64,000 nt of DNA, from the IMG/VR virus record IMGVR_UViG_3300028920_000022, positions 186,001-250,000 of that record. One strand, given 5' to 3'. This document shows, one piece after another, positions 1,320 to 45,656 of the stretch. A model generated the notes under the pieces. It saw nothing but the letters and a program-made list of their open reading frames with translations. It was not told the DNA's origin and did no database searches. Each line of letters opens with the position of its first letter. The first letter of the stretch is position 1. The translations under genes and the position numbers were made by a program.

Positions 1320-1333
1320 TCGATAGGTAATTT

Positions 1334-1663: not shown

Positions 1664-1672
1664 GTGTGAGTT

Positions 1673-2626: not shown

Positions 2627-2629
2627 GAC

Positions 2630-2938: not shown

Positions 2939-3530
2939 TTTGTTTCCTAAGGACCGTTTATTAAAACTTGTTGCTGATCAAATAAATAATTGCACAGAAT
3001 GTGAGCTGTGTAAAGATTCTGGTAAAAAGGTTCCGGGGGAAGGTAATAGGAACGCTGAGATTGTTTTGTGTGGAGAAGCTCCTGGCGCCAAAGAATCAGA
3101 ACTAGGTATTCCCTTTGTGGGTAGGGCTGGTAAGCTTCTCGATAATATGATTAAAGCTATGGGGTATAAGCGGGAAGATTTGTATATTCTTAATACTGTA
3201 AAATGTCGCCCACCCAATAACCGAAATCCTGAACCGGCGGAAATAGAGTCATGTGCTAAATATTTGGACATGCAGCTACAGATTATTGATCCCTTTCTTA
3301 TTATTGCTTTAGGCGCGGTAGCATCAGATCGTCTATTATCCGAAACAGTTGGACAAAGTCTTTCCAGCCGGCGTGGAAAGATACATTCTTTATGTATAGA
3401 TAAATCACGATATAATGTTATCTGCACATATCATCCGGCGTATTTGTTAAGAAATCCGGCAGCTAAAGCCGAAGCTCATAAAGATTTGACTTTGGTAAAA
3501 AACACTATTGATGAATGGCATGCGCTGTGA
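2928..3530 (+). CDS. udg: uracil-DNA glycosylase, family 4 (4Fe-4S)
   Basis: CTECELC, GEAPG, PFVGRAG, NTVKCRPPNNRNP, ESC, TYHPAYLLRNP. Start placed at the ATGATG at 2928/2931. Confidence 0.93.
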   Translation: MMVDLFPKDRLLKLVADQINNCTECELCKDSGKKVPGEGNRNAEIVLCGEAPGAKESELGIPFVGRAGKLLDNMIKAMGYKREDLYILNTVKCRPPNNRNPEPAEIESCAKYLDMQLQIIDPFLIIALGAVASDRLLSETVGQSLSSRRGKIHSLCIDKSRYNVICTYHPAYLLRNPAAKAEAHKDLTLVKNTIDEWHAL

Positions 3531-3574
3531 AAAGAAGGCATACTGCACGAACTTTGGAGAGGCTTGTTAAAAAC

Positions 3575-4528
3575 ATGAACAAATTTGGTTTGGCATCCCC
3601 TACGCCCGATTATCCTGCTGAAACGCCCATTACTGATATGGAACCAAAAGAATCAATTAAAGAAACCAATGTACAACTTTGGTCTTCTTCAGACAACAAT
3701 ACTTATTATGCCGTTGCTAGAACTGAAAGCTTATTGCCGCCGGATGTGTATGACATAGGTTATAATAATGGTACTATATTATTTAATAGGGTAAATTATT
3801 CTATAGAATCTTTAATTCGGTTTGAAGATTCTGCAATAGATAAGGTTGTGGGAGACATACAAACCTTTTGGAACAGAGAAGATTTATTTAAAGAATATGA
3901 TTTATTGTTTAGGCGCGGAATGTTATTATATGGACCTCCGGGTGGAGGCAAAAGTTGTACCGTTAAACTGATTGTACATGATGTTATTGAAAAGGGCGGA
4001 GTAGCGATAAACTTTACCGATCCACATTTGTTTATTCAAGGAATGCGTGTTTTTAGAACAATTCAACCAGAGACCCCTGTGGTTGTGATAATGGAAGATA
4101 TTGAGGCGCTATTGCGAAATTCGGATTCCTCCTCTATTTTGAATCTTTTGGATGGAATTAATGGGTTCGAGCGTATTGTATATTTAGCCACAACCAATTA
4201 CCCAGAAAAGCTGGAGCCACGTATAAAAAATCGTCCATCCAGGTTTGATCGGCGGTACAAGATAGACAACCCAGGACAAGAAACCAGGAAAACGTATCTT
4301 GATTTTCTCTTATCCAAATCGGATAAGATAAAAGGTTTGGATATAGAGAAGTGGGTTAAGGACACCAATGGAATGAGCTTTTCTCATATTAAGGAATTGT
4401 TTATTTCTGTGAATGTGTTTGGGTATTCTTATGATGAGGCGTTGGAAGATTTGAGAGAAATGTCTAAGAATATTACCTCAGAAGATGGAAAGAAACCTGC
4501 TGGGTTTTATAAGGATGAGGCGTGGTGA
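3575..4528 (+). CDS. AAA+ ATPase
   Basis: Walker A GPPGGGKS, Walker B VIMEDIE, second region of homology ATTNYPEKLEPRIKNRPSRFDR. Start chosen at ATG 3575. Confidence 0.9.
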   Translation: MNKFGLASPTPDYPAETPITDMEPKESIKETNVQLWSSSDNNTYYAVARTESLLPPDVYDIGYNNGTILFNRVNYSIESLIRFEDSAIDKVVGDIQTFWNREDLFKEYDLLFRRGMLLYGPPGGGKSCTVKLIVHDVIEKGGVAINFTDPHLFIQGMRVFRTIQPETPVVVIMEDIEALLRNSDSSSILNLLDGINGFERIVYLATTNYPEKLEPRIKNRPSRFDRRYKIDNPGQETRKTYLDFLLSKSDKIKGLDIEKWVKDTNGMSFSHIKELFISVNVFGYSYDEALEDLREMSKNITSEDGKKPAGFYKDEAW

Positions 4529-11709: not shown

Positions 11710-12883
11710 AACGATAATTGTAGGAGACATTCACTTAGGTAAGGGTGTTTCTGTTGGTAAGCCAGGTATTGGTAACGCCATTAATAGTCGTGTTGCTGAT
11801 CAGTTGCGTTTGTTGAATTGGATATTTGATCAAGGGGTAGAGTATCAGATTGATAGGTTCATTATTACCGGAGATATATTTGAAGATGTAAAACCGGACC
11901 CACAACTTATTGTAATATTTGTAGATTGGTTGAAACGATGTGAGGACAGCGGAATAGAGTGCCACATTATTGCGGGAAATCATGATATTCGTCGTACTGG
12001 CGATATCTATATTTCAGTTTTGGATGTGGTTACTGCTGCTGGTTTAAGTAATACCACTATTTATAAAAACATTCACACTATTCACACAGATGGGGTATCG
12101 TTTACGTTATTACCTTTTAGGGATCGTTTATCGTTAGGGTGTGAAACAGTAAATGATGCCTTACAAAAGATTGGGGAAAAGTTGCCGTATGAATTGTTGG
12201 ACATTCCGTACAACAATATTCCTGTGTTAGTGGGGCATTTGGCGTTGGTAGATTCGTTTTATACTACCGAGTTGGGTGATGCCGCAAATGAGTTGATGTG
12301 TCCGTATAGTATGTTCGAAGGTTATGAATATGTGTGGATGGGACACGTACATAGTCCACAGATTATGCAGAAAAAACCTCATGTTGCGCATATTGGTAGT
12401 ATGGATTTATCAGATTTTGGTGAATGTAAACAAACCAAAATCCTTATTTTATTCGATCCTACACAGCCGCATAAGGAAATACCTGTTCCTAGCCGACCTT
12501 TGGTGAGAATAAAGAAGGATATTGGTTCTGGAACAGATCCTACACAGTTTTTATTGGATCTAATCAATAAATTAGATGTTAAAGATGCAATTATTAGTTT
12601 GGAGGTTAAACATTTAGACCCAGAAGGGGCAGAGATAGACCGAGATAAAGTGTTATCTGCTTTATTTGATGGTGGGGCTTATCATGTTTCTAGGTTTTCT
12701 GAGTCTAGAAATGTGGCGGTAGTTCCGGAAGACAAAAAAGAATTGCTTGAATACACCGTAGATCCAAAATCTGCCATCAAATTGTATGCTGACATGCTCG
12801 AATATGAAGACGAGCAGGAGAGATTATCATTTTTACAGTTTTGTGAAGAGTGTGTAGAGGAATACTACGCCAAGGAAAAGTAA
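11702..12883 (+). CDS. sbcD: SbcD/Mre11-like metallophosphoesterase nuclease
   Basis: GDIH, TGDIF, AGNHD, GHLA, MGHVH motifs; directly upstream of an SbcC-like ATPase. Confidence 0.9.
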   Translation: MNRTIIVGDIHLGKGVSVGKPGIGNAINSRVADQLRLLNWIFDQGVEYQIDRFIITGDIFEDVKPDPQLIVIFVDWLKRCEDSGIECHIIAGNHDIRRTGDIYISVLDVVTAAGLSNTTIYKNIHTIHTDGVSFTLLPFRDRLSLGCETVNDALQKIGEKLPYELLDIPYNNIPVLVGHLALVDSFYTTELGDAANELMCPYSMFEGYEYVWMGHVHSPQIMQKKPHVAHIGSMDLSDFGECKQTKILILFDPTQPHKEIPVPSRPLVRIKKDIGSGTDPTQFLLDLINKLDVKDAIISLEVKHLDPEGAEIDRDKVLSALFDGGAYHVSRFSESRNVAVVPEDKKELLEYTVDPKSAIKLYADMLEYEDEQERLSFLQFCEECVEEYYAKEK

Positions 12884-15027
12884 TGCAGCCCCTTAGATTA
12901 TATATAGAAAACTTTATGGGCAATAAAAAGAGTGATTTGGATTTCACTTCTTTTAAATCTTGCCTTGTTGTGGGGAAAAATAAACACGATCCTCGTGAAT
13001 CTAATGGCGTTGGTAAAAGTACCATCTTTAAAGCAATAGATTTTGTGCTCTTTGGTAAATATCCCTCTGACCATATTGAGGAAATTATATTTGAGGGAGC
13101 GGAGAAGTGTACAGTCTCATTGGAATTTGAAGCTGGTGGCAGTATTTATCGGGCAATTCGCATTCGTCATAGCAGAAGCGAACTAAAACTGGAGGAAAAG
13201 GCTGGGGACAAATGGATACCTAAGGGTCAGAGAACCAGTAAGCAAGCTACCATTGAGTTAAAAAAGCTCGTTCCTATTAGTTATGGGGCTTTTAATAGCT
13301 CTGTTTTATTTGCCCAGGGTGATTTGAGTGGTTTAGCAGAAGCCACGCCAGATAAAAGGAAGGCAATGTTAAAAGAGCCTCTCCAACTGGCTGTGTATAG
13401 TAAGTTCGAGGAGATTGCTAAAAAGAAAACCAAGAAGGTTGATGAGGAATTGCTCCTGGTAGAGAATCAGATCAAAGCCCTTGGTAATCCCCAAGAAACT
13501 ATTGACGAATATTCTAAACGAATAGAAAAAATAGTTCAAGAAGTTAAACAATGTAAAAATATTGTAGACATTATTCGTGAGAAAAACAATAAATATATTA
13601 AAGAACGTGATAAAATAAGTAAAAAACTTGAATCTGCTTCGGGCAGTTTGGGCAAATTAGAGGTTTTAAATACTAAAATCGCTAATCAACAAGCTCAAAT
13701 AAATAAATTAAACAGTAAAATAGAGAAAATAAACAGAGATATTGTAGAAAAGAAAGCAGATTTGAGGGGTTTGGAGTTATCAATTAAGTTATTGAATGAC
13801 GATTTGGAGAAAATCAACGTACCTTTGAAACCTGAAGAGGAAATAGAGCAGAATATAAAAGAGCTGAGGGAATCTGAAGAAAAAGGAATTGCATATCTAG
13901 CACAGACACAGGCACAAATAGACGCATGTGCACATACGTTGCCGGGCGAAGAGGTTTGTCCTCAGTGTCAACAGGGGATCACAGACGATTATCGCGAGAC
14001 TTTTATTAAAGAAAATAGCTCTAAAAAAGATGATTTAACCGCTTCTTATAAAAAATATTACCAAAAACTTACCAAAATACAAACGGATATATCTAATTTA
14101 AAAATAGAACTCAAAAATATTACCAAAACAAAAGCTAAAATAACTTCTTTGAAATCCGAAATACAATTAAAAGAATCTAAAATAGAAAATGTTAAAGAAA
14201 TAATTGAACAGTTTAATGCTTCTATAAAAGACGGCACGGAAGCTCTTGAATTAAGCATGAAGGAGTTGGCAGAAATACAAGAAGAACACAAATTATTATC
14301 TAAGGAACTAGAAAAAACTAACGTTACCCAGCTACAAAACAAAGAAAACGAATTAAATTCTACTATTTCTGAAACAGAAAAGGAATTAAATGAAGCATTA
14401 AACAATTCTTCTATGAAAAATAGGGAACTTGGTAATGCAGAGTCAACCATTGATAGGGCTAGAGAAGATTTACGTAAAATTGAAAATTATAGTAAACAAA
14501 AAATACAACTTGCTAAACAAATAAAAACACAGAAACGTGGAATATTTGCTTTTAGTCCCAAAGGAATTCCAACTTTAATTATAAATACTATACTTGACGA
14601 TTTACAATTTGAGGTGAATTCTTTATTGCAAGAGCTAAGACCAGAATTGGGAATGAAATTTATTATCTCTAAAGACGAAAAAGATACATTAGATATTATA
14701 TTTACTGTTGATGGAAAAAAACGAAGCTATAGTTTATTATCTGGTGGGCAAAAAATGTACATTGCTCTCAGTTTAAAAATGGGACTGTCACTTTTAATTC
14801 AAAAGAAACTAAATGTTAACATCAATTTCTTGGAATTAGACGAAGTAGATCAGTCTTTGGATAAAGCGGGAGTAGAAGCATTTGCGGACGTAATACGTAA
14901 ATGGCAGGACAAATTCAAGATTTTTGTTGTTACTCACAATGATAGTTTGAAAAATAAGTTTTCGCATGCCATTCTTGTCGAGAAGGGCAAGGATGGAGCC
15001 CATGCTAAAGTGGTTACTCAATGGTAA
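12883..15027 (+). CDS. sbcC: SbcC/Rad50-like SMC ATPase
   Basis: Walker A SNGVGKST, long coiled coils, central CPQC zinc hook, LSGGQ signature, LELDEVDQSLD Walker B/D-loop, VVTH. Confidence 0.93.
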   Translation: MQPLRLYIENFMGNKKSDLDFTSFKSCLVVGKNKHDPRESNGVGKSTIFKAIDFVLFGKYPSDHIEEIIFEGAEKCTVSLEFEAGGSIYRAIRIRHSRSELKLEEKAGDKWIPKGQRTSKQATIELKKLVPISYGAFNSSVLFAQGDLSGLAEATPDKRKAMLKEPLQLAVYSKFEEIAKKKTKKVDEELLLVENQIKALGNPQETIDEYSKRIEKIVQEVKQCKNIVDIIREKNNKYIKERDKISKKLESASGSLGKLEVLNTKIANQQAQINKLNSKIEKINRDIVEKKADLRGLELSIKLLNDDLEKINVPLKPEEEIEQNIKELRESEEKGIAYLAQTQAQIDACAHTLPGEEVCPQCQQGITDDYRETFIKENSSKKDDLTASYKKYYQKLTKIQTDISNLKIELKNITKTKAKITSLKSEIQLKESKIENVKEIIEQFNASIKDGTEALELSMKELAEIQEEHKLLSKELEKTNVTQLQNKENELNSTISETEKELNEALNNSSMKNRELGNAESTIDRAREDLRKIENYSKQKIQLAKQIKTQKRGIFAFSPKGIPTLIINTILDDLQFEVNSLLQELRPELGMKFIISKDEKDTLDIIFTVDGKKRSYSLLSGGQKMYIALSLKMGLSLLIQKKLNVNINFLELDEVDQSLDKAGVEAFADVIRKWQDKFKIFVVTHNDSLKNKFSHAILVEKGKDGAHAKVVTQW

Positions 15028-18519: not shown

Positions 18520-19746
18520 ATGTCTGAAATGCAAATTGAAACTGAAGAACTTGAGTTTTGTAAAATTAAAGTTAACTATACCGCAGACACGGATGTGGTT
18601 ATTGGTAAACAGCAGGAGGCAGTAAAGCAGCTGCGAAAATTGCCGGTTCCTGGTTTTAGACCGGGAAAGGCTACCGATACTGCGATTAAAATTCGTTATA
18701 AGGATAAGATTAAGGACTGGGTTTCTAAGGAAATGTTGCAGCAGGCAAATGATGATATCTTATTCGAAACTAAAATGCGCCCAATAGGCGATCATCAAGT
18801 TCAAGATCTAAAATTGAAAGATAATGAGTTTAGTTGTGAGCTGGTTTATTTAAAGAAACCTGATTTTGAACTAGGTAAATATCAAGAGCTTGAGATTCCT
18901 GAGCCGCATTTAGAAACCACCGTTGACGATTTACGCGAACAAATGTTGCAAAAACTTCGTGAACAACACGGTTCGTTGCGCCCGTATGAGGAAAATGATT
19001 TTGTTCAGGCGGGAGATGCTATAACTTTAGATTATGCAATATATGAAAATGATGCGAGCGGTAAAGTTTTGAAAGAAGAAACTGGGGCTGTGTATAATGT
19101 TGGCAGCAATGCTTTGCCAGGTGGTTTCGATGATAATCTCGTAGGAATGACCGCAGGTGAGAAAAGGGAATTTCCGTTGATGGGAAATGCGTTTGCTGTA
19201 GTAACCATGCATGCCGGATCTAAAAAGGAACCGTGCCCGCTAGATGATGAATTAGCTAAGAAACTTGGGGTGGAAAGTTTTGAAAAGGTTCGTTCAGAGG
19301 TTAATGCATCTGCCGAAAGACAGTTAAAAGGTCAGCGAGACCAGATGATTAGTGTGCAAATAAAGAATCAGCTAGTTAACAGTCATGATTTTGAAGTCCC
19401 ACCATGGTTATTAAGCATGGAAGCCCAGCAAATAGCTATGCAGGAAGGTGTAAAGTGGGAAGGTTTGGAAGAAGAAGCAAAAGAAAAGTTTCTTAAAAGG
19501 GCAAAAGATCAGATTAAATTTACACTAATAATGGATTCTATTACGTTGGCAGAACCTGAAATTCAGTTATCCGATGAGGAAGCTATACAATTGGTAGATA
19601 AGCGGCTTCAGATGATGGGCGTTCCTAATACACGCCAATTCATTGTCGAGTCGTCTCAGAATGGACGACTAGCTTCTTTAGTGGCTAATTTACGTAATGA
19701 TTATGCTATGCAGTGGCTAGTAGATCATGCAAAAATTGTGGAATAA
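18520..19746 (+). CDS. tig: trigger factor (three-domain, diverged FKBP domain)
   Basis: VPGFRPGKA ribosome-binding loop, YLKKPDFELGKYQELEI, AGDAITLDY, GFDDNLVGMTAGEKREF, LDDELAK, FEVPPWLL, C-terminal helical domain. Confidence 0.88.
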   Translation: MSEMQIETEELEFCKIKVNYTADTDVVIGKQQEAVKQLRKLPVPGFRPGKATDTAIKIRYKDKIKDWVSKEMLQQANDDILFETKMRPIGDHQVQDLKLKDNEFSCELVYLKKPDFELGKYQELEIPEPHLETTVDDLREQMLQKLREQHGSLRPYEENDFVQAGDAITLDYAIYENDASGKVLKEETGAVYNVGSNALPGGFDDNLVGMTAGEKREFPLMGNAFAVVTMHAGSKKEPCPLDDELAKKLGVESFEKVRSEVNASAERQLKGQRDQMISVQIKNQLVNSHDFEVPPWLLSMEAQQIAMQEGVKWEGLEEEAKEKFLKRAKDQIKFTLIMDSITLAEPEIQLSDEEAIQLVDKRLQMMGVPNTRQFIVESSQNGRLASLVANLRNDYAMQWLVDHAKIVE

Positions 19747-21163: not shown

Positions 21164-23830
21164 ATGGACTATGTAAGCCTTCATAATCATACCACATTTT
21201 CGATTATGGATAGCTTGATTAAGCCTTCAGAGCTTTTCAAGCGTGCGAAAGAGTTAGGACAACCCGCAATTGCCGTAACCGATCATGGTACGTGTGCAGG
21301 TTTGTGGGATTGTCTAAAGCTATCTCGCAGTACCGGTGTAAAACTGATCGCCGGGTGTGAGATGTATTTTGTAGATGATGTAAAAGATACTGATGCCAGA
21401 TTACGACATATTGTACTTTTAGCCAAGAACGCAGAGGGTTATAAGAATTTATTAACCTTGGTTAAAGCAGGTTTCGATAATAACATCATAGCAATGCAAA
21501 AAGTTTTTCCCCGCGTTGATTGGGAAATATTGGAAAAATATAGCTCAGGTTTAATTTGTACTACTGCGTGTGGAAATGGGATTATTTCACAGCTTTTAAA
21601 TGACAAAAAGTTTGATGAAGCCAAGGCACAAGCCAAACGATTGGTAGATATTTTTGGAGACGATTTAGCTATTGAGCTTCAGCCACACGCAATGCGTCGC
21701 AAGGCTAACTTATATGGCAACGAAATAGATCAGACATTTACAAATCGTCAATTAAAGAAATTAGCAGACGAGTTAGGGATCAAATGTATTGTTGCCACAG
21801 ATGCGCATTATGTCAGACCAGAGCAACACAAGGCTCACGATGTAATGTTGGCGATTGGGTCTAGGCAGCCTATTTCTTCTGGTGCCAGGCTTAAGTATAA
21901 CGTTCCAGATTTCTATATAAAGTCTGACGAAGAGATTCTGAGTAAGCTAAAGCGAGCTTTTGGTGAGGAGTTTGCCAAGGAGTGTATAGAAAATACCATT
22001 TATTTTTCTGATAAGTGTGAGTTTCCTGATTGGATTGATCCAAAATATTCCAACCCCAGCGGTAAGGAGTTGCCCGAATTCCCTGTAAAGGATCAAAAAG
22101 ATTATGGCGAATTTAAAGAGTGGTTGGAAAAGAATCCATTGGACGGTTTGGAAGAAGATAAGGCGTATTTGCGTTATAGGTGTGACAAAGCTGTAAATGA
22201 AAGGGTGCCTGCAGAGAAACAAGCGATTTATCGTGAAAGGTTAGAAACAGAATTTGAAGTAATAGAGTACCAGGGCTTTTCTTCATACATGCTCATTGTT
22301 TCTGATTATTTAGAGTTTTGTAGAAATAATAATATTAGGCTCGGTCCCGGTCGCGGTTCTTGTGGTGGCTGCATGATTGCGTATTTAATAGATATACACG
22401 TAGCTGATCCTTTAAAATATGGACTTATTTTTGAGAGGTTTCATAATAAAGAGAAGTCGGCGCCTGATATAGACTCAGACGTATGTCCGTCACAAAGACC
22501 AATGTTGCATGAGTACATTCGTAATAAATACGGAGAGGATCATGTAGCGCACGTCTCTAATGTAAACACATTAACGCCTAAACCGTATGTTAAAGCTATA
22601 GCGCGCACTTTTGAATATGGCGGAGATCGCAAAACAGCTGTTGCTATTGGTGCCGCCATAGCTGACGCTATACCTGCCGATATAAAAACTATAAAGTCTG
22701 CTTTGGAAAAAGCCCCATTGTTTGCCGAATATGCGAAACGATATCCTGAATTGGTAGAATTTGGTGATGATATTTGTGGCAAAGCTGTAGCTTGGTCTAC
22801 CCACGCTGGTGGTTTAGTTATTTGTGCCCGATCTTTGGTGGGACTTATTCCACTACGACGAGACAAGGAAGGGTCTGTTTCTATTGAGTATGAAAAAGAG
22901 CGTGCTGAGGAAAATGGTTTGTTAAAGATGGACACTTTGGCAATTGAAACATTGCACGATATTGATAACACATATGCTCTAATTAAAAAGGCGGGCAAAG
23001 AGTTGCCACCAGATCCACCAAATTATGATGAATGTGATGTTGCCACATATGATATGATTAGTAATGGTGACACTTTTGGTGTATTTCAGCTAGGAACCAG
23101 TGGTGGTACTATAGATTTGTGTAGAAAAGTTAAGCCTAAGAATCTTGATGATCTGGCGGTAATTAATAGTTTAGCTAGACCTTCCGCTAGGGACATTCGA
23201 AAAGATTATATACAAACCAAGAATGGCGATAAGCCGGTCGAAATAATCCACCCATCTTTGGAGCGCGCATTTAGACCAACATTGGGTTTTGGTTTATATG
23301 AGGAATGTTTAATGTTCTTGGCTCAAGACGTTGCCGGTTGGTCAATGTTGGAAGCGGATCGTTTGCGTAAGTTAACCAAAGCTAAAGGTAAATATCCAGA
23401 GAAGGTAAAGAAGTGGGAAGAAGATTTTATTCAGGGATCTATAGATAGCGGAGTTGGTAAAAAATTTGGCAAAAAGATTTGGAGTGAGGTGATAGAAAAG
23501 TTCGGTGGCTATGGGTTCAATCGGAGTTTGTACTTTTTGGAAACTGTTGATATATTCTCTAGTGCTGGGAAGTATCTTTATAAAAAACCAATACAGGATA
23601 TTCAACCTGGAGAATTCGTCCGATCAAGGGATGAAGAAACTGGTGAGGACATTTACATCGAAGTAATTGGAAATTATGATCACGGTAAATTAGAAGTTGT
23701 AGAAGTAGAATTAAACACCGGAGAAAAGGTTAAATGTACGCTGGATCATAAGTTTAGGGTACAGGAAACTGGCGAGATGCTTCCATTATGGAAAATTTTA
23801 GAAGATGGATTATCAATAGTGGTAGGATAA
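21164..23830 (+). CDS. dnaE: DNA polymerase III alpha (DnaE), N-terminal fragment fused to the N-intein
   Basis: PHP motifs HNH/TDH/GCE/DAH; GPGRGSCGG, PDIDSD, STHAGG, KMDTL, EKFGGYGFNR; then intein sequence to the stop. Confidence 0.95.
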   Translation: MDYVSLHNHTTFSIMDSLIKPSELFKRAKELGQPAIAVTDHGTCAGLWDCLKLSRSTGVKLIAGCEMYFVDDVKDTDARLRHIVLLAKNAEGYKNLLTLVKAGFDNNIIAMQKVFPRVDWEILEKYSSGLICTTACGNGIISQLLNDKKFDEAKAQAKRLVDIFGDDLAIELQPHAMRRKANLYGNEIDQTFTNRQLKKLADELGIKCIVATDAHYVRPEQHKAHDVMLAIGSRQPISSGARLKYNVPDFYIKSDEEILSKLKRAFGEEFAKECIENTIYFSDKCEFPDWIDPKYSNPSGKELPEFPVKDQKDYGEFKEWLEKNPLDGLEEDKAYLRYRCDKAVNERVPAEKQAIYRERLETEFEVIEYQGFSSYMLIVSDYLEFCRNNNIRLGPGRGSCGGCMIAYLIDIHVADPLKYGLIFERFHNKEKSAPDIDSDVCPSQRPMLHEYIRNKYGEDHVAHVSNVNTLTPKPYVKAIARTFEYGGDRKTAVAIGAAIADAIPADIKTIKSALEKAPLFAEYAKRYPELVEFGDDICGKAVAWSTHAGGLVICARSLVGLIPLRRDKEGSVSIEYEKERAEENGLLKMDTLAIETLHDIDNTYALIKKAGKELPPDPPNYDECDVATYDMISNGDTFGVFQLGTSGGTIDLCRKVKPKNLDDLAVINSLARPSARDIRKDYIQTKNGDKPVEIIHPSLERAFRPTLGFGLYEECLMFLAQDVAGWSMLEADRLRKLTKAKGKYPEKVKKWEEDFIQGSIDSGVGKKFGKKIWSEVIEKFGGYGFNRSLYFLETVDIFSSAGKYLYKKPIQDIQPGEFVRSRDEETGEDIYIEVIGNYDHGKLEVVEVELNTGEKVKCTLDHKFRVQETGEMLPLWKILEDGLSIVVG
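23525..23830 (+). mobile_element. split intein N-half (101 aa, Ser1)
   Basis: Starts SLYFLETVDI (block A-like) directly after GYGFNR; KPIQDIQPGEFV; block B VKCTLDHKF (TxxH); acidic. Confidence 0.88.
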
Positions 23831-23831
23831 T

Positions 23832-25031
23832 ATGGCAGGATATACTCTAGAACAATATTTAGAAAGAATACCTGAAAAATACAGGAACAAAGTTAAATTA
23901 ATAAATAAATTTCAAGGTAAGAGAACAAAAGTATTATTTACAAATGAAGTATGTGGGTGTGAAAGAGAGTATTTTTTGGGCGTGTTGGTGTTGCGTAAGA
24001 CGTTTGATGTATGTAAACATTGCAGATCACAATATGTAAGTAAAAAATATTTTTGTAAAAGGTGTGGCAAAGGGTTTATTACTGAGGAGTGGTTTCTACA
24101 ACATGATAAGAAATGTCTTGCTAAATTTAAAAATTTAATTGAGGGCGAAGATTATGTTACCTGTTACATTTGTGGTTTTCAGGCTTTAAGTCTAGGTTTG
24201 CATCTTCGTGTAAAACATGGGATTGATCCCGAGGAATATAAAAAAGATCATCAGATAATTTGTAGGAAATCTTCCGATATCTATGCTAAACAGAACTTAG
24301 AGAACTCAGAAGTTTTTCGTAGTTGGATAAAAGAAAGAGGACCTGAAGCCCAAGAATATTTAAATAAAAGGGGAAAAGAACTTAGTAAATCGATCATGTC
24401 TAACCCCGAGGAGCGAAAACGTCGTTCCAAAGCCATGGCTATACTGGATCGAACTGAGTATATGAGAAAAAAGGCATCAGAAACTGCTATTAAAACTTCG
24501 GCACGTAAGGACATACAGGAGAAGCGGGCTGCACAATTGAAACGATGGAGAGATAATAATCCTGAGATTTTTTATGAAAAATGTGTTAGTAAAATGCTAA
24601 ATACTTGGCATAGTAAGCCTGAAACTATACTATTTGAAGCGGTTTTAAATTACAATGATTATGTATTTAAGCGTAATCAAATAGTTAAATCTGAAATATT
24701 TCCAACTAAATCTAAACGAAAACAAATAGACATTGGAGACAAATCAAAAAGAGTATATATTGAATTTGATGGACAATTACATTTTAAAGAAACACAATTA
24801 AAACAGCTTGAACGTGTTCAATTAAAAGATGGCTTACTGGATAAACATATTATTAAACATGGTTGGACATTAATACGTGTTTCTTATGATCAATTTTCGT
24901 ATCGTAAACGAGATTTTGGGTTTAAAAAAGAATGTTTGGAAAAAGTATTCGAGATTTTAGATAATCCAACCCCGGGAGTACACACTATCGGGGAGGCGTA
25001 TGACGCTAAAAAAGAGACAAACAATGACTAA
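23832..25031 (+). mobile_element. free-standing Vsr/DUF559-like homing endonuclease with several Zn fingers, inserted between the dnaE halves
   Basis: CKHC, CKRC...HDKKC and CYIC...HLRVKH fingers, basic helical repeats, C-terminal SKPE...QIDI...IEFDGQLH...KD...GWTLIRV. Confidence 0.75.
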
Positions 25032-25134
25032 CATTAAATCTGTTCGTTCCATTGGTAAGGTTCAAACATATGATTTGGAGGTTGATCATCCGGATCATCA
25101 ATACTATTTGTCTAGTGGCATGCTCACCAGCAAC
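25024..25134 (+). mobile_element. split intein C-half (37 aa, ends Ser-Asn; +1 residue is Ser)
   Basis: MTNIKSVRSIGKVQTYDLEVDHPDHQYYLSSGMLTSN|S: block F TYDLEV and block G terminal Asn. Confidence 0.9.
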
Positions 25135-26322
25135 AGTCACGCCACTTTCTACTCTATGGTTGGATATCATACCGCTTATCTCAAAGCCCATTATCCGTTG
25201 GAATTTTTGGTTGCTATTTTAATGAATAAAGTCAATTCTAACTCACCATCCGCAAAAGATAGCATAGCCAAAATTAAAGAAGAAATAAGAGCACTAAATG
25301 TTAATATTCTACCGCCAAACATAAACACATCAGAATTAACCTATTCAATTATTGATGATAAAACTTTGCTTACAGGCTTTGATGCTCTTAAAGATATGGG
25401 TAAGAACGCTATCCCCGAGATCTTAGCTAAACGTCCGTTTGATAGCTTTGAAGATTTCTTGCTCAAAACTGATGGTCAGAAAGTTACCGCCCCTGCCATC
25501 AAAGCCCTCGCCGCTAGTGGTAGCCTGGATTCATTCGGTTTAACTAGAAAACAAATGTATTTGTATGCTTCTGATATAAAAAAGAAAATACAAGTTCATT
25601 TAAAGAATAAAAGAGAAGGTGAGTTTAAATATCCTTGGCCGGCAGATATAGAGGAATGGACAATTCCTGAATTATACGCCATGGAACGTGAATATTTGGG
25701 AGAAGGTATCAGCGGAGATAGATTCCAAGTATATGGCGGATTTTTTACCAAGAAAGCTCCCAGTTTCAAAAAACTTCCTAAACTGCACCCTCCTCCACCA
25801 GATGATATGACGGAAAAAGAACAACGTAAATATACCAAACATATTACAATGTTGCAGGCGGAAGTAAAGAGTTTCTTTGAATTTAAGGTAAAAAAAGAAG
25901 ATAGTAAGATATTTGGCGAAGTAATGGCTAAAGTTGCCCTTTGTGATCCTTGGGGCAACCAAATGACTATGACTTGTTTCCCCGAGGGTTGGTTACATTT
26001 ACAAAACCGTGTTTCGGAACTATTGAATAATAAACACAAATTCGATACAGGGCTTGGTTTGTATATAAATGGCGAACTAAATTGGTACGATGGTGATATA
26101 TCATTAATATTTGGGGACGTAGCTCGTTGTTGTCCTGCTCCTCAGATGCCATCCGATAGAGATAATAAGAAGGTTACTATTCGTAGGTCCAAGAAGAAAA
26201 ACCCCAAACAAGAAGAGCCAGAGAGAGACATTCTATTGGAAGAAATAGAAGATGATTTGGTAGATCGTGGTTATTCCGATTTGGATGATGAAGATGACGA
26301 TGTACAGGACGGTTTTGTTTAA
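25024..26322 (+). CDS. dnaE: DnaE C-terminal fragment preceded by the C-intein (alternative start 25000)
   Basis: After the intein: SHATFYSMVGYHTAYLKAHYPLEF, ILPPNINTS, HhH GFDALKDMG, EREYLGEGISG, OB-fold region. Confidence 0.92.
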   Translation: MTNIKSVRSIGKVQTYDLEVDHPDHQYYLSSGMLTSNSHATFYSMVGYHTAYLKAHYPLEFLVAILMNKVNSNSPSAKDSIAKIKEEIRALNVNILPPNINTSELTYSIIDDKTLLTGFDALKDMGKNAIPEILAKRPFDSFEDFLLKTDGQKVTAPAIKALAASGSLDSFGLTRKQMYLYASDIKKKIQVHLKNKREGEFKYPWPADIEEWTIPELYAMEREYLGEGISGDRFQVYGGFFTKKAPSFKKLPKLHPPPPDDMTEKEQRKYTKHITMLQAEVKSFFEFKVKKEDSKIFGEVMAKVALCDPWGNQMTMTCFPEGWLHLQNRVSELLNNKHKFDTGLGLYINGELNWYDGDISLIFGDVARCCPAPQMPSDRDNKKVTIRRSKKKNPKQEEPERDILLEEIEDDLVDRGYSDLDDEDDDVQDGFV

Positions 26323-26334
26323 AAAGGTTTTATA

Positions 26335-26991
26335 ATGCGATGTGTTAAATGTCAAACAGAAATACCTCCCGAATGGAAAGCGGCAATTAAAAGCAATATT
26401 TGCCCGGCTTGCGGTGGGGAATTAATGAACGATTCCATGCAGGAACTTTTGCGGGAATTAAGTAAAGCACTTGAAGCTATGCCAAACGATCCCGAAGGAA
26501 TTGCCGGATGGTTATTATCTAATTATGAGCTTAGAAAAATAGGTACCGGAGAACCAGTTAATGAGTTTTATGGATCTCAGCGAAAAGTACCACAAGGTAA
26601 AGATTTAGTAGTTAATGAGAATAGAATTCAGCAGTTTCTTAAACAAGCAGGAGTAAAACCCAAGAAAACGCAGGCAGATTATGCAAGTTTAGCTCAACAA
26701 ATTCGAGACGGTGGCACTGATTATGGTGAGGCTTTTTCAGATCCGTCGCCTGAACAGCCAGAAGAGTTTGTAGAGGAAGCTCGCGATCCCGAATATACAC
26801 AACAAGTATTGTCTGCTATGACCACAGGCGCGCCCACAAAAACCAGCATGGGAGCAGCACAGCCATCTTCTGATTTAGATAATGATATGTCAGGTTTGCA
26901 TCCTGCTTTGCGACAAGACCGTATACACCGTCTTCGCCAACAATTAGAAGTCGGTTCCGGCGGCAAAGCGGGTGTTATTCGTAGAAAGTAA
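26335..26991 (+). CDS. Zn-ribbon hypothetical protein
   Basis: MRCVKC...CPACG at the N-terminus. Confidence 0.65.
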   Translation: MRCVKCQTEIPPEWKAAIKSNICPACGGELMNDSMQELLRELSKALEAMPNDPEGIAGWLLSNYELRKIGTGEPVNEFYGSQRKVPQGKDLVVNENRIQQFLKQAGVKPKKTQADYASLAQQIRDGGTDYGEAFSDPSPEQPEEFVEEARDPEYTQQVLSAMTTGAPTKTSMGAAQPSSDLDNDMSGLHPALRQDRIHRLRQQLEVGSGGKAGVIRRK

Positions 26992-27331: not shown

Positions 27332-27782
27332 AGTAGAGTGGACTGAAGAGGCAGCTCCTGAAGAAACCCGTGAGGAACGGGTGGTTATTCTTATTTCTTC
27401 TATTGCTGAGGAAATTACCATTGCTCACAAAAAGAAGTATGATCAGGAAACTGCAGAACAAACCGCAGCGTTATGTTTGGATGCCCAACGTGAGTTGGCT
27501 GAATTTTTATCAGAAGCTGAGTTTTTATCAAAAGAAAGCAAAGCTGACGTCGAGAGATTAGAATCTGAGCAATACTTTTATTACAAAGGAAAAGCTGTAG
27601 GAAAGACTTCTGATGCAGCGTTAAAACAGGAAGTAGCCCGAGATAAAGAAGTTGTAAAGGCGAAGAAGAAACAGTTCCGGGCGGAAGCCGATTATAATAA
27701 ATGGCGAAATTTGTTCGGATTTTTGAAAGATGCCCATTATTACTTCAGAGGTGTGGCTAAAGGTAAAGATGAATGGAGCTGA
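27324..27782 (+). CDS. helical protein, possibly a UvsY-like recombination mediator
   Basis: All-helical composition and position directly upstream of the RecA-like gene; the assignment is inference. Confidence 0.35.
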   Translation: MTEVEWTEEAAPEETREERVVILISSIAEEITIAHKKKYDQETAEQTAALCLDAQRELAEFLSEAEFLSKESKADVERLESEQYFYYKGKAVGKTSDAALKQEVARDKEVVKAKKKQFRAEADYNKWRNLFGFLKDAHYYFRGVAKGKDEWS

Positions 27783-28822
27783 TTATGGGAAGACCTCCTA
27801 AACCAAAAAATAAAATAGATATAAATGCGTTATTAGAAAAAGTACAAGCATCATACGGAAAAGATAAAGGTAGAGCAGCCGAGGTTTCCACCGGTAGCTC
27901 GCTGGTTAGACCAAACAGAGACGACCAGTTTGTATGTTGGAAAGATTCTCCGTGGGAATCACTTACTCAAATTAGAGGATTGCCGTTTGGTCGTATCTGC
28001 CAAATCGCAGGCAGACCAGATAGCGGTAAAAGCACCCACGCTATGCAGTTTATGAAGAATGCCCAGGATCAGGGCTGCGTAGTGATATTGTGGGATGCCG
28101 AAAACAAATTTAGCGCCACCAGATTTGATAAGTATTTTGGTGGACGCTCTGATGATCTCCTTTTAGTGAGATCAAAATTAATATTGGAAGGTGGTGATAG
28201 AGTAGAACGTTTCATACATGAAATAAAAAATATGGATCCTGACGCCAAGATTTTGGTTGTTTGGGATTCAGTTGGCGGCACACTTGCGAAAAATGAAGCG
28301 GTGGATGTTTCAGAAGATAAAAAAGGTAAAAAGAACAAGTATGAAGGCAGCATGGCTGATAATAAGCAGCTAGCTGCCGCCGCCAAAGAAAATGGTACGG
28401 TGATGCGTGGATTGATTCGTTTAATGGAGAAATATAAAGATCAGGATAATGAATCAATTTCAGTATTACTAATTAACCAAACATATTCCAACATTGGTTC
28501 GCATGGTCAAAAAGAATCCGGCGGACAAAAGGTGGAATTCTTTTCTTCCATAATAGTTCAATTAACTCGCAAGGGTGATTTGAACTTTACTCGTGATGGT
28601 GTAAAACGAAGAAAAGGCATTGTGACAAGGGCAAAAGTTTCTAAGAATCATTTATTTGATGGCGAAGATACGATTGCGGAACTGGAATTGGCTATCACGG
28701 CTGGCGGAATCAATCTTCTTAGCGATTATAAAGTTTTGGAAAAGAAAACCAAGACTGGTTGGGAAGATAATGATGAGGCTGATGTAGAAGTCGAGGAGCC
28801 CATTTCGGATGAGGTTAATTAG
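27773..28822 (+). CDS. RecA/UvsX-like recombinase
   Basis: GLPFGRICQIAGRPDSGKST Walker A, WDAE, VWDSVG Walker B, LINQ, SGGQKVEFFSS. Confidence 0.9.
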   Translation: MELIMGRPPKPKNKIDINALLEKVQASYGKDKGRAAEVSTGSSLVRPNRDDQFVCWKDSPWESLTQIRGLPFGRICQIAGRPDSGKSTHAMQFMKNAQDQGCVVILWDAENKFSATRFDKYFGGRSDDLLLVRSKLILEGGDRVERFIHEIKNMDPDAKILVVWDSVGGTLAKNEAVDVSEDKKGKKNKYEGSMADNKQLAAAAKENGTVMRGLIRLMEKYKDQDNESISVLLINQTYSNIGSHGQKESGGQKVEFFSSIIVQLTRKGDLNFTRDGVKRRKGIVTRAKVSKNHLFDGEDTIAELELAITAGGINLLSDYKVLEKKTKTGWEDNDEADVEVEEPISDEVN

Positions 28823-43838: not shown

Positions 43839-45656
43839 ATGACACAACAAATTTTTGAGAAGTTTAAACTGGGTCTAAAGAATTTGGATCCAGTTTATTT
43901 TTGTGAGTCTAATCTTATTTTAGACGGAAAGCCCTTTCGAATAAATGGAAACGGGTATAAGCCTTATGCGGATATTTATCGTTATATAGGAATTAAAGCG
44001 TTAGAAGAAGATTCTAAACCCGTGGTTTTGGTGAAGGGACGTCAGGTAGGAGCCACTACCATGGCAGCCAACCTGGAGATGTATTTTATGACGTCCGGGT
44101 TGTTTGGCAATAATGGGCGCCCACCAATACGTGTATTGCATTGTTTTCCCACTTTAGTACACGTATATGAATATGCAAAAACTAAATTAAGAGCCACCAT
44201 TTCACAATCTAAACTAATAGACGATCCTAAAAAGCCGAACAAGAAAATACCTTTTGTTGAGTCATGCATAGATAAATCTTCAGATGCCAGCAACTCTTTG
44301 CAGTTTAAACAATTTATTGATGGTAATTTTTTAAGAGTAGAATCAACCGGTTTGGATGCTGACCGTTTGCGCGGTGGTACGGCTGATGTAATTTTATACG
44401 ATGAGGTTCAGGATATTTTCAAAGAAGCTATTTCAAACGCCAACAAACTGTTATCTCAGGCAAAATATGGAAATGGCGGAGTAAAAGTTTATTTTGGAAC
44501 TCCTAAACAAAGGGGAGGACATTACTGGGACATGTGGCAGATGTCCAACCAACAGTATTATCATCTGGGTTGTGAAGAATGTAAGAAACTATTTCCTCTT
44601 TATACTCCAGGCAGTGATGAGTGGAAAAAGATTTGGTTATACGGTTTTACAGTGAAATGTCCACATTGTGGGTGTGAACAAGACAAACGCGATGCCGCAG
44701 AACGCGGCATGTGGGTTCCAATGCGCCCAGAGAACGATAAGTATGTTGGGTACCATATTAATCAAATGTACATGCCTAACTACACCAAAGAGAAAATTCT
44801 CGATGAGCGTCCAGAAGTCAACCCATCGATGACGGAAAGAGGTTATCAGAATGAAGTTTTGGGGGAGTTTTTTCGTGGTGAAGCGTCACCAATCACACCC
44901 GAGGAAATCAAGGAAAAGTGTGCCGATCCGGACAGGGGCATGTCTGAGGGAATTTCTATTAACGAAAATAAAAAAGTATATGTTGGCTTTGACTGGGGCG
45001 GTAAAGATTTTGTGGATGGCGAAAGAAAGACTCAGGGACAATCATACAGTTCTGCGGTGGTTTTAACTGAAGAAGGACCAAACCGGTTGTCTATAAAGTT
45101 TGCCAACCTTTTGAAACGCAACGATATAGAGACGAAAAAAGATATTGTTAATGAGATTTATAGGCGTTATAGTGTCACTTTAGGAATTGGCGATATTGGT
45201 TTTGCTAATGATTTGTCCGAGATACTATATCGGGAACATGGTCATCGATTTTTAGCTAGCAGATCGTCTCCAAACGTTTCTGGTAGAATAAAATTTGATG
45301 AATCTTATATGCCGCCCACTATTGTGTTTGAAAAAGATTATTATATTGGTGAGCTATTTAATATGATGAAGCGAGGAATGATCAGGTTTCCATTTAAAAG
45401 TTATGAAAAAATAATTTGGTTAGTTAATCATTGTTCTAGCATGGAAATTAAAACAACTTCCAATGTTTATGGTGAAGCGATATATAGATTTGTTAAGGGA
45501 ACTACACCTAACGATGGACTGATGGCATTATTAAACGCATATTTAGCTTATAAATTTGATGTTAGCGGTGGTTTTAGTAATAAAATGGCAGGTCTTATGG
45601 ATAAACCTGGACCTAAGAAAATTTCTGCGGTCCTTGGTTATATTCCTAGAATGTAG
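43839..45656 (+). CDS. terL: terminase large subunit
   Basis: VLVKGRQVGAT ATPase motif, ILYDEVQD Walker B, FGTPK coupling motif, CEEC/CPHC Zn ribbon, VGFDWGG and NDGLMA RNase-H-like nuclease residues. Confidence 0.88.
   Translation: MTQQIFEKFKLGLKNLDPVYFCESNLILDGKPFRINGNGYKPYADIYRYIGIKALEEDSKPVVLVKGRQVGATTMAANLEMYFMTSGLFGNNGRPPIRVLHCFPTLVHVYEYAKTKLRATISQSKLIDDPKKPNKKIPFVESCIDKSSDASNSLQFKQFIDGNFLRVESTGLDADRLRGGTADVILYDEVQDIFKEAISNANKLLSQAKYGNGGVKVYFGTPKQRGGHYWDMWQMSNQQYYHLGCEECKKLFPLYTPGSDEWKKIWLYGFTVKCPHCGCEQDKRDAAERGMWVPMRPENDKYVGYHINQMYMPNYTKEKILDERPEVNPSMTERGYQNEVLGEFFRGEASPITPEEIKEKCADPDRGMSEGISINENKKVYVGFDWGGKDFVDGERKTQGQSYSSAVVLTEEGPNRLSIKFANLLKRNDIETKKDIVNEIYRRYSVTLGIGDIGFANDLSEILYREHGHRFLASRSSPNVSGRIKFDESYMPPTIVFEKDYYIGELFNMMKRGMIRFPFKSYEKIIWLVNHCSSMEIKTTSNVYGEAIYRFVKGTTPNDGLMALLNAYLAYKFDVSGGFSNKMAGLMDKPGPKKISAVLGYIPRM

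What the first reader, a model, noticed from the sequence alone, without database searches (positions are those of the whole stretch)
23525..25137. Ser1/Ser+1 split intein that is almost cysteine-free
Seen: the N-half starts with Ser (SLYFLETV), the C-extein +1 residue is Ser, and the penultimate residue is Ser rather than His. The only Cys in either half is a non-nucleophile position next to the block-B TxxH (KCTLDH). IntN is acidic and the IntC N-terminus is basic (TNIKSVRSIGK). Known: most split inteins use Cys1, charge complementarity drives association of the halves, and Cys-free split inteins are sought for ligation under oxidising conditions. Inference: this is a candidate new orthogonal, thiol-independent ligation tool.
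Basis: partly seen in the sequence, partly recalled or inferred. Interest (0 to 1): 0.7.

Follow-up and report, generated by a model that had tools for sequence, protein, structure and literature searches.

The report
Serine-type split intein in phage DnaE
A giant phage from marine sediment carries its only replicative DNA polymerase gene in two pieces, joined after translation by a self-splicing protein element that uses serine instead of cysteine; it is real and looks functional, but it is one member of a large, uncharacterised family, not a one-off.

Summary
Window 23525-25137 runs from the Ser1 codon of an N-intein half (101 aa) to the Ser+1 codon after a C-intein half (37 aa).

The host gene is the only dnaE (Pol III alpha) of a 458.7-kb phage. 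Removing the two halves restores the universal GYGFN(K/R)|SHA motif. This is the "fractured gene" layout of Dassa et al. 2009.

The intein is class 1, and its nearest solved relatives are the cyanobacterial DnaE split inteins. Its insertion site lies four residues downstream of theirs. The penultimate Ser is also found in Npu DnaE, so it is not unusual.

It is not unique. An exhaustive search gave 255 cluster representatives, nearly all at this site. Of the 150 best, 53 have Ser1, 47 Cys1 and 16 Thr1.

Two further results:
- His53 sits at the "motif NX" position reported for Ser1 inteins. It tracks the nucleophile: 68 of 70 Ser/Thr1 members have it, against 5 of 46 Cys1 members.
- The single Cys71 is conserved in 115 of 116 members whatever the nucleophile, at a position that other inteins fill with Ala, Val or Leu.

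Verdict: a new member of a known kind. Thiol independence is plausible. Activity, speed and orthogonality are untested.

The parts
21164..23524 (+). dnaE N-extein (787 aa: PHP, Pol III alpha and finger domains), ending ...KFGGYGFNR
   Evidence: Pfam PF02811, PF07733 and PF17657. NCBIfam TIGR00594 at 580 bits, above its 434 cut-off. It is the only PF07733 match in the 458.7-kb genome.
23525..23827 (+). IntN, 101 aa, from SLYFLETV to SIVVG; the TAA stop is at 23828-23830
   Evidence: Translation. phmmer against PDB: Npu and other cyanobacterial DnaE inteins at E 6e-5 to 1.6e-4. 255 relatives found.
23525..23527 (+). Ser1 codon (AGT), the proposed first nucleophile
   Evidence: The same column holds S in 54, C in 46 and T in 16 of 116 aligned family members.
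23681..23683 (+). His53 codon (CAC), at the motif-NX position 22 residues before the block-B His
   Evidence: Aligns with Npu Arg50, the column of PolB16 His68 in Fig. S7 of PMC10189870. It is His in 68 of 70 Ser/Thr1 members and 5 of 46 Cys1 members.
23735..23749 (+). Cys71, then block B Thr72-Leu-Asp-His75 (CTLDH)
   Evidence: Cys71 is conserved in 115 of 116, Thr/Ser72 in 116 of 116 and His75 in 116 of 116.
23832..25031 (+). Free-standing homing-endonuclease gene (399 aa): N-terminal zinc fingers (C2H2-like and Ros/MucR type), a helical linker, and a C-terminal Vsr-like / EDxHD nuclease domain. It starts 1 nt after the IntN stop, and its own stop overlaps the IntC start (ATGACTAA).
   Evidence: Pfam ROS_MUCR. 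Profile A1 against PDB 2jsp, E 3.7e-6. AF2 model with pLDDT 93. Foldseek: Vsr 1cw0 prob 0.99, 1vsr prob 0.98, I-Bth0305I 3r3p prob 0.84 with TM 0.64. Family-invariant residues D300, E311, D313, H317, D333. JGI names homologues very-short-patch-repair endonuclease.
25024..25134 (+). IntC, 37 aa, from MTNIKSVRSIGK to MLTSN. Asp17 (block F:4), His25 and Asn37 are present.
   Evidence: Translation. End-to-end weak match to Npu DnaE IntC 3-36, E 0.087. The M-[TGS]-NIK start is shared by relatives.
25135..26322 (+). dnaE C-extein (395 aa plus stop), beginning Ser+1-His-Ala (SHATFYS...); carries HHH_6 and the C-terminal domains
   Evidence: Pfam PF14579. NCBIfam PRK05673 positions 752-1062.

Best explanation
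This is a functional, naturally split class-1 intein in the only Pol III alpha (dnaE) gene of a 458.7-kb marine-sediment phage.

Three tightly packed, probably co-transcribed ORFs make up the locus:
- DnaE(1-787) fused to IntN.
- A free-standing Vsr-like homing endonuclease.
- IntC fused to DnaE(788-1182).

Proposed mechanism (inferred):
1. The acidic IntN and the basic N-terminal strand of IntC associate and fold into one HINT domain.
2. Ser1 makes an N-O acyl shift. Block-B Thr72/His75 and the motif-NX His53 help this step.
3. The Ser+1 hydroxyl takes over the N-extein by transesterification.
4. Asn37 cyclises, without a penultimate His, as in Npu DnaE.
5. An O-N shift yields intact DnaE with GYGFNR-SHA restored.

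The endonuclease is the mobility engine. It is proposed to cut intein-less dnaE alleles at this motif, after which the whole IntN-endonuclease-IntC cassette is copied in by repair.

Cys71 is most likely a buried packing residue and not a nucleophile.

Shown here: the anatomy, the precise restoration of the host motif, homology, family-wide conservation of catalytic residues, co-variation of His53 with the nucleophile, patchy distribution among close homologues, and a confident model of the two halves together.

Inferred only: that splicing happens, its rate, its thiol independence, and the endonuclease's target.
For: - Anatomy and exact junctions.
- The exteins meet at one model position. 81 of 119 close homologues have GYGFNKSHA uninterrupted, and 33 are split at the same point.
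- IntN resembles solved DnaE split inteins at E 6e-5. IntC matches Npu IntC end to end, including the ...SN terminus.
- Complex model of the halves: score 0.86, best of 3 controls 0.02. That mark was reached by 51 of 78 solved complexes and 2 of 108 mismatched pairs. The runs agree in at least 95% of contacts, and the partner's pLDDT is at least 81.
- Family conservation: His75 116/116, Thr/Ser72 116/116, Lys76 and Phe77 97%.
- dN/dS is 0.07-0.37 wherever dS could be computed.
- His53 versus nucleophile: 68/70 against 5/46, Fisher p 3e-23. Of 23 independent tree pairs, 19 go the same way and 0 the opposite way, sign test p 4e-6.
- His53 lies in the motif-NX column of PMC10189870.
- Only one dnaE in a genome that CheckV rates complete.
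- Endonuclease fold and invariant residues.
- No group I intron or other Rfam family in 23000-25700.
- The arrangement is reproduced by a separate assembler.
Against: - No experiment of any kind; no RNA or protein data (one search found only DNA runs).
- Pfam HINT models score below their gathering cut-offs (E about 1e-3).
- The complex pass may reflect memory of solved DnaE split inteins, so it shows likeness and not binding.
- In the published NX motif the His is preceded by Arg or Lys. Here it is preceded by Asp52.
- The stricter treekit test, which uses only well-supported branches, had 4 pairs and was not significant.
- The tree rests on about 100 columns.
- Ser1 inteins are often slow or inefficient, and IntN halves can aggregate (PMC11923092, PMC12707363).
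Confidence: 0.85

Rival explanations
1. The halves no longer splice. They act only as a non-covalent dimerisation module that holds the two DnaE fragments together, as described for a fragmented phage ribonucleotide reductase (PMC3045599, listed).
For: Association is predicted with confidence. Splicing has not been observed. Non-splicing assembly of fractured phage enzymes has precedent.
Against: Every catalytic position is kept across 116 diverged members: position 1 S/C/T, Thr/Ser72, His75 and, in this copy, Asp17c, Asn37 and Ser+1. The His53-nucleophile coupling only makes sense if the chemistry at residue 1 is under selection.
Confidence: 0.06
2. Cys71, not Ser1, is the working nucleophile (a class-3-like branched route), so the intein is thiol-dependent after all.
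For: Cys71 is conserved in 115 of 116 members, as strongly as the catalytic His75, and lies next to block-B Thr72.
Against: The conservation is the same in Cys1, Ser1 and Thr1 members. The class-3 signature is absent: block F:4 is Asp17, not Cys, and B:12 is Phe77, not Trp (read directly from the sequence). In other inteins this column holds Ala, Val, Leu or Gly, and gp41-1 also has Cys there (alignment), which is typical of a buried strand residue facing away from Thr72. Position 1 is always S, C or T, and it co-varies with His53.
Confidence: 0.03
3. A decaying element: the fractured dnaE is non-functional and the phage relies on the host polymerase.
For: Homing-endonuclease cassettes can inactivate genes, and nothing shows expression.
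Against: Both exteins are full length and match DnaE models strongly. IntN is under purifying selection. The ORFs are intact and tightly coupled. Many phages keep the same layout.
Confidence: 0.03
4. Assembly or annotation artefact: in reality a contiguous intein with a nested endonuclease, or an intron-interrupted gene.
For: The genome is a metagenome assembly. Contiguous inteins occur at the same site in relatives (L012, L016; a few).
Against: The three ORFs lie in three different frames with clean stop/start junctions. A separate assembly gives an identical 146-kb contig at depth 24, though probably from the same sample's reads. A salt-marsh run holds near-identical pieces of the endonuclease gene. 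Relatives L004 and L006 have the same two halves with no endonuclease between them. No Rfam intron hit.
Confidence: 0.02

Closest known systems
Cyanobacterial DnaE split inteins (Npu, Ssp DnaE)
   Same: Same host protein and same conserved motif region. Same canonical split point, about 101 + 37 aa against 102 + 36 aa. These are the best solved matches: IntN E 6e-5 with 21 of 58 aligned residues identical, and IntC aligned end to end. No penultimate His; Npu also ends ...ASN. Acidic IntN and basic IntC strand.
   Different: The insertion site is four residues downstream: GYGFNR|SH here, against AEY|C(FNKSH). The cyanobacterial-type junction is visible in P0125...FAEY|CLSYDT. The C-extein CFNK comes from my own knowledge. 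Ser1/Ser+1 instead of Cys1/Cys+1. His53 where Npu has Arg50. The halves are adjacent with an endonuclease gene between them, not at distant loci. The host is a phage.
Fractured genes of Dassa et al. 2009 (PMC2677866): split intein plus free-standing Vsr-like or GIY-YIG endonuclease, including three DnaE loci from ocean metagenomes
   Same: Identical architecture: N-part with IntN, then a free-standing endonuclease, then IntC with the C-part, on one strand. Phage origin. A Vsr-like endonuclease family. DnaE as host, at sites other than the cyanobacterial one.
   Different: The characterised members of that set (gp41-1, gp41-8, NrdJ-1, IMPDH-1) use Cys1. I could not establish whether any of their three DnaE sites is this one, because the supplement is not held. 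Their DnaE loci were mostly partial.
Cysteine-less split inteins used as tools (Aes123 PolB1/CL/CLm, LCGC14 PolB2, CP21, GOM-OPS-1, PolB16 OarG, Neq Pol)
   Same: Ser1 with Ser/Thr+1 oxyester chemistry. A motif-NX histidine is present. Phage or metagenome origin for most.
   Different: All of those sit in B-family polymerases. Their IntN halves are 115-120 aa and often carry an extra beta-hairpin, whereas this one is 101 aa and DnaE-like. Their NX His is preceded by Arg or Lys; here it is preceded by Asp. This intein keeps one Cys.
I-Bth0305I / EDxHD (Vsr-like) homing endonucleases (PMC3239194)
   Same: The nuclease domain of the intervening ORF has the same fold (3r3p TM 0.64; Vsr prob 0.99) and a family-invariant E, D, H, D set.
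   Different: This one is free-standing between intein halves, not intron-encoded. It has N-terminal zinc fingers of C2H2 and Ros/MucR type. Its cleavage activity and target are untested.

Membership tests
Class 1 intein (HINT domain) | Nucleophile (Cys/Ser/Thr) as first residue, directly after the N-extein | tested here: met
   Ser1 (AGT 23525-23527) follows GYGFNR. The column holds only S, C or T in the 116 aligned relatives, but that set was selected for S, C or T at residue 1; in the unfiltered tally of the 150 best hits, 116 of the 123 with a recognisable site have S, C or T.
Class 1 intein (HINT domain) | Block B Thr-x-x-His | tested here: met
   T72-L-D-H75. His is invariant and Thr/Ser is invariant in 116 relatives.
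Class 1 intein (HINT domain) | Block F Asp/His, C-terminal Asn, and a +1 nucleophile | tested here: met
   IntC has YD17LEV, DH25QYY and ...TSN37, followed by Ser+1. It aligns with Npu IntC D17, H24 and N36.
Class 1 intein (HINT domain) | Excision restores a conserved host motif | tested here: met
   GYGFNR + SHA equals GYGFNKSHA, which is uninterrupted in 81 of 119 close homologues. Both exteins abut at model position 752.
Class 1 intein (HINT domain) | HINT fold | tested here: inconclusive
   Sequence matches to solved inteins at E 6e-5, and a confident two-chain model. But Pfam HINT models are below cut-off, and no coordinates were compared with a solved HINT domain.
Class 1 intein (HINT domain) | Protein splicing activity | not testable with these tools
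   Needs expression and product analysis.
Naturally split intein in a fractured gene (Dassa 2009) | IntN at the C-terminus of one ORF, IntC at the N-terminus of the next, same strand, split at the canonical endonuclease-insertion point | tested here: met
   ORFs 21164-23830 and 25024-26322, in different frames. Halves of 101 and 37 aa.
Naturally split intein in a fractured gene (Dassa 2009) | Free-standing homing-endonuclease gene between the halves | tested here: met
   ORF 23832-25031 has a Vsr-like fold. Homologous ORFs lie in the same place in L005, L007 and L008. Nuclease activity was not tested.
Cysteine-less split intein (as defined in PMC10189870) | No Cys at positions 1 and +1 | tested here: met
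   Ser1 and Ser+1.
Cysteine-less split intein (as defined in PMC10189870) | No Cys anywhere in the intein | tested here: not met
   Cys71 is present and conserved in 115 of 116.
Cysteine-less split intein (as defined in PMC10189870) | Motif NX: a His about 22 residues before the block-B His, preceded by Arg or Lys | tested here: inconclusive
   His53 is in the right column: it aligns with Npu R50, which shares the column of PolB16 H68, and the spacing of 22 matches the 23 between Psp-GBD Pol H73 and H96. It tracks Ser/Thr1. The preceding residue, however, is Asp52, not Arg or Lys.
Cyanobacterial DnaE split-intein allele | Insertion between ...AEY and CFNKSH, with Cys1/Cys+1 | tested here: not met
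   The site here is four residues downstream and the nucleophiles are Ser/Ser. It is a relative, not the same allele.
Class 3 intein | WCT triplet: Trp B:12, Cys F:4, Thr G:5, with no nucleophile at position 1 | tested here: not met
   B:12 is Phe77, F:4 is Asp17, and residue 1 is Ser.
Vsr-like / EDxHD homing endonuclease | Vsr-type nuclease fold with conserved acidic and His catalytic residues | tested here: met
   Foldseek: 1cw0 prob 0.99, 1vsr prob 0.98, 3r3p prob 0.84. Invariant residues D300, E311, D313, H317, D333. Sequence-only searches of PDB and Pfam did not find it.

The most novel reading that the evidence does not exclude
The DnaE GYGFNK|SH intein allele is a natural mutational series. 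The first nucleophile has switched between Cys, Ser and Thr twenty or more times, and almost every switch came with a matching change at one second-shell residue: His53 with Ser/Thr, Asn with Cys, together with Leu or Lys at position 56. If that coupling is causal, it gives a compact, transferable rule for turning fast Cys1 DnaE-type split inteins into thiol-independent ones. This window's member, or a close Ser1 relative, would then be an efficient mesophilic, DnaE-type, nearly Cys-free split intein orthogonal to the PolB-derived tools.
Probability: 0.3. Interest if true: 0.65.

Novelty: new member of a known kind. Interest (0 to 1): 0.42.

Why it matters
Split inteins that need no cysteine allow protein ligation under oxidising conditions and alongside thiol chemistry. 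Papers from 2023-2026 still call them rare. The biochemically characterised ones come from B-family polymerases, and only two efficient, mutually orthogonal ones are reported (PMC10189870, PMC12707363).

This locus, and the 50 or more Ser1 and 16 Thr1 relatives found here, point to an untapped, DnaE-type reservoir of compact 101 + 37 aa candidates related to the fastest known split inteins.

For intein biology, the family offers a within-allele test of why inteins choose Ser or Cys. The motif-NX histidine, so far inferred from distantly related inteins, follows the nucleophile here across many apparently independent switches.

For phage biology the finding is ordinary: a selfish endonuclease-intein cassette in an essential replication gene.

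Tried and rejected
- blastn of the locus against 50,697 phage records: no match.
- tRNA scan of the window: none.
- Pfam and NCBIfam intein models reach only E about 1e-3 to 4e-3, below their cut-offs.
- Sequence and profile searches of PDB and Pfam did not recognise the nuclease domain of the middle ORF. Only the fold search did. The whole-protein Foldseek E-values are weak (2e-2 to 3e-1) because the query has several domains.
- A locus search with the C-extein returned one uninformative locus. Empty-site homologues came from the protein search instead.
- The supplement of Dassa 2009 is not held, so identity with their DnaE-1, -2 or -3 sites could not be checked.
- A paper search for Arg50 in DnaE inteins found nothing. 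Text searches for the native CFN/AEY flanks found nothing.
- treekit's independent-pairs test on well-supported branches had only 4 pairs and was not significant. My own pairing on the best tree, ignoring branch support, gave 19:0. It should be read with that caveat.
- dS is saturated for most pairs.
- No RNA runs hold the sequence, so expression was not examined.
- Considered and rejected: group I intron; contiguous intein read through frameshifts (three frames); class 3 mechanism through Cys71; IntC start at ATG 25000 (it has a GGAGG three bases upstream, but all relatives start M-[TGS]-NIK).

Full report
**1. What is at the coordinates**

The window is bases 186001-250000 of a 458,729-bp virus record that CheckV rates complete. 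The reads that hold it come from a marine-sediment metagenome.

Window 21164-26322 holds three same-strand ORFs in three different frames.

- ORF 1 (21164-23830, 888 aa) has the PHP, Pol III alpha and finger domains of DnaE. It ends ...KFGGYGFNR-SLYFLETV...GLSIVVG-stop.
- ORF 2 (23832-25031, 399 aa) starts one base after that stop.
- ORF 3 starts at ATG 25024, overlapping the ORF 2 stop (ATGACTAA). It reads MTNIKSVRSIGKVQTYDLEVDHPDHQYYLSSGMLTSN-SHATFYSMVGYHTAYLKAHYP... and continues into the HHH and C-terminal part of DnaE.

- IntN is 101 aa with a single Cys at position 71 and His at positions 53 and 75. IntC is 37 aa with no Cys.
- IntN is net -9 (pI 4.6). The first 14 residues of IntC are net +3. 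IntC as a whole is net -1.

One omission: the stated span also contains a whole endonuclease gene.

**2. It is a real intein in a real gene**

- The two exteins abut exactly. The N-part matches NCBIfam Pol III alpha model positions 4-752 and the C-part matches 752-1062.
- Among the 119 closest DnaE homologues (58-76% identical around the junction), 81 carry GYGFNKSHA uninterrupted, 33 are split at this same point, and a few carry a contiguous intein there. This patchy presence among close relatives is what a mobile element looks like.
- IntN matches solved cyanobacterial DnaE split inteins at E 6e-5 to 1.6e-4, with 21 of 58 aligned residues identical. IntC aligns end to end with Npu DnaE IntC at E 0.087, including the terminal ...SN.
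- The whole N- and C-ORFs also match the two NCBIfam models of 876 and 449 positions. From my own knowledge I take these to be the cyanobacterial split-DnaE halves.
- Pfam HINT models only reach E about 1e-3, below their cut-offs.
- A two-chain model of IntN (+5 extein residues) with IntC (+5) passed the control test. The score was 0.86 and the best of 3 controls was 0.02. That mark was reached by 51 of 78 solved complexes and by 2 of 108 mismatched pairs. The runs agree in at least 95% of contacts, and the partner's pLDDT is at least 81. Similar complexes are solved, so this shows likeness, not binding.
- There is one dnaE in the genome.
- No Rfam family, and so no group I intron, is detected in 23000-25700.
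- No convincing + strand terminator lies between the ORFs.
- A separate assembly of the probable source run gives a 146-kb contig identical over 22500-26500. A salt-marsh run holds near-identical fragments, including pieces of the middle gene.

**3. The middle gene**

- Its N-terminus has C2H2-like and Ros/MucR-type zinc fingers.
- An AlphaFold2 model built on 35 homologues has mean pLDDT 93.
- The C-terminal domain is matched by E. coli Vsr (1cw0 prob 0.99; 1vsr prob 0.98) and by the catalytic domain of homing endonuclease I-Bth0305I (3r3p, prob 0.84, TM 0.64).
- D300, E311, D313, H317 and D333 are invariant in the family.
- JGI labels several homologues as very-short-patch-repair endonuclease.

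This is the Vsr-like family that Dassa et al. 2009 described as free-standing genes between split-intein halves in "fractured genes", including three DnaE loci from ocean metagenomes (PMC2677866).

Homologous genes sit in the same place in L005, L007 and L008. L004 and L006 have the two halves with nothing between them. More distant relatives carry other endonuclease-like genes there (L018, L019). The endonuclease therefore comes and goes while the split intein stays.

**4. The family**

Twenty-one related loci were found in IMG/VR. An exhaustive phmmer search over 1.84 billion cluster representatives gave 255 hits at E <= 1e-3, of which 80 were at E <= 1e-10.

Of the 150 best, nearly all sit right after a [YW]xFN[KR] motif, and most end within about 20 residues of the IntN end, so they are split. 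Residue 1 is Ser in 53, Cys in 47 and Thr in 16.

Ser1 is thus the commonest state of this allele, not an oddity. The closest extein relative, P0275, has Cys1. L004 (Cys1), L005 (Ser1) and L006 (Thr1) are 66-73% identical to one another.

IntN evolves under purifying selection. dN/dS is 0.07-0.37 wherever dS is not saturated, and 0.29-0.37 for the three least diverged pairs.

**5. Mechanism**

All class-1 catalytic positions are present: Ser1, Thr72, His75, IntC Asp17 (F:4), His25, Asn37 and Ser+1. In 116 aligned relatives His75 is invariant, position 72 is always Thr or Ser, and position 1 is S, C or T by the selection of that set.

The class-3 signature is absent, because F:4 is Asp and B:12 is Phe. 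The missing penultimate His is shared with Npu DnaE, which also has Ser there.

The most informative result concerns His53. Of all columns, it has the highest mutual information with the nucleophile class (0.65 bit).

| Residue 1 | Members with His at position 53 | Other residues there |
|---|---|---|
| Ser | 53 of 54 | |
| Thr | 15 of 16 | |
| Cys | 5 of 46 | mostly Asn |

Fisher's test gives p 3e-23. Position 56 follows the same pattern: Leu or Ile with Ser/Thr1, Lys with Cys1.

On a tree built without these two columns, the nucleophile class changes at least 23 times. Of 23 phylogenetically independent pairs, 19 change His53 in the same direction, none in the opposite direction, and 4 do not differ (sign test p 4e-6). 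Restricted to well-supported branches, only 4 pairs remain (3.3 in the same direction, 0 opposite, on average over random pairings), which is not significant. The result is strong in direction but rests on a short alignment.

His53 aligns with Npu Arg50. In Fig. S7 of Pasch et al. 2023, Npu Arg50 shares the column of PolB16 His68, the "motif NX" histidine. That His is conserved only in Ser1 inteins and is required for splicing in three of them (PMC10189870). The spacing to the block-B His is 22 here and 23 in Psp-GBD Pol (H73/H96).

One difference: the published motif has Arg or Lys before the His, whereas this family has Asp52 (46 of 54 Ser1 members).

In the complex model, His53 touches IntC residues 15-16, next to the F:4 Asp17. 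I infer that it lies near the active site, but I could not measure distances.

These data fit Ser1 as the working nucleophile and oxyester chemistry under selection.

**6. Cys71**

It is conserved in 115 of 116 members, equally in the Cys1, Ser1 and Thr1 classes. It immediately precedes Thr72 on a beta-strand, so its side chain should point away from the active site (inference).

In the published alignment of solved inteins that column holds Ala, Val, Leu or Gly, and gp41-1 also has Cys there. A packing role is the most likely one. The conservation is still a warning that a Cys-free variant may lose stability. Ala or Val are the natural first substitutions to try.

**7. Comparison with what is known**

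It works like Npu DnaE or gp41-1, a canonical naturally split class-1 intein, but with Ser/Ser chemistry like the PolB-borne cysteine-less inteins.

- It is not the cyanobacterial allele. That junction (...FAEY|CLSY..., seen in P0125) lies four residues upstream.
- It fits the 2009 fractured-gene class in every structural feature.
- Papers up to 2026 list only PolB-hosted inteins among characterised cysteine-less split inteins and call them rare.
- I found no paper that characterises a DnaE-hosted Ser1 split intein. My searches cover open-access text only.

**8. Verdict**

The feature is real, and the description is accurate. The element is a new member of a known kind, drawn from a large, uncharacterised family.

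Thiol-independent splicing is plausible and has indirect support. Efficiency, speed, tolerance of Cys71 replacement and orthogonality, especially towards Npu DnaE, are open.

The most interesting by-product is the nucleophile/NX-histidine coupling within one allele, which can be tested directly by reciprocal swaps.

Noticed in passing
G000:C1:352997-353998 (locus L023, ORF 442-3585); outside the window: A second intein in the same phage. It is contiguous, with Cys1/Cys+1 (...TNP|CVTGDT ... VIHN|CSEQ) and an endonuclease-sized insert, and it sits in what reads like a ribonucleotide reductase. One genome therefore carries both thiol-type and serine-type inteins.
   Followed up: partly
window 18520-19746 (+): A 408-aa ORF with the Trigger_N and Trigger_C domains, a phage-encoded trigger-factor-like chaperone.
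   Followed up: no
L002 1837-2619 and L003 4001-4783: In the closest IMG/VR relatives (77% identical over IntN residues 6-101, Ser1), the IntN reading frame does not stop. It runs on for about 165 more residues of unknown nature before the IntC ORF, and there is no endonuclease gene between the halves.
   Followed up: no
L006 4001-4303; L012 (contiguous form); 16 of 116 cluster representatives: Thr1 variants of the same intein allele. They keep His53, as the Ser1 forms do.
   Followed up: partly
window 25000-25023: An in-frame ATG at 25000, with GGAGG three bases upstream, would add MTLKKRQT to IntC. Relatives all begin M-[TGS]-NIK, so 25024 is preferred, but the longer form is not excluded.
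   Followed up: partly
window 23375-23523: A 156-nt contig from a different marine-sediment run matches up to two bases before the intein start (one mismatch) and then diverges. It may be another allele or an empty site in a related phage, but it is too short to tell.
   Followed up: no
L012 (IMGVR_UViG_3300023179_000009, 458,813 bp): A contig of almost the same length as this genome carries a contiguous Thr1 intein at the same DnaE site, with a long Lys/Arg/Ser/Gln-rich insert where an endonuclease domain would be expected.
   Followed up: no
window 12850-15027, 27773-28822, 43839-45656: Neighbouring genes include an SMC/RecN-like ATPase, a RecA-like recombinase and a large terminase subunit of the gpA type. 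The intein sits in a replication and recombination block.
   Followed up: no
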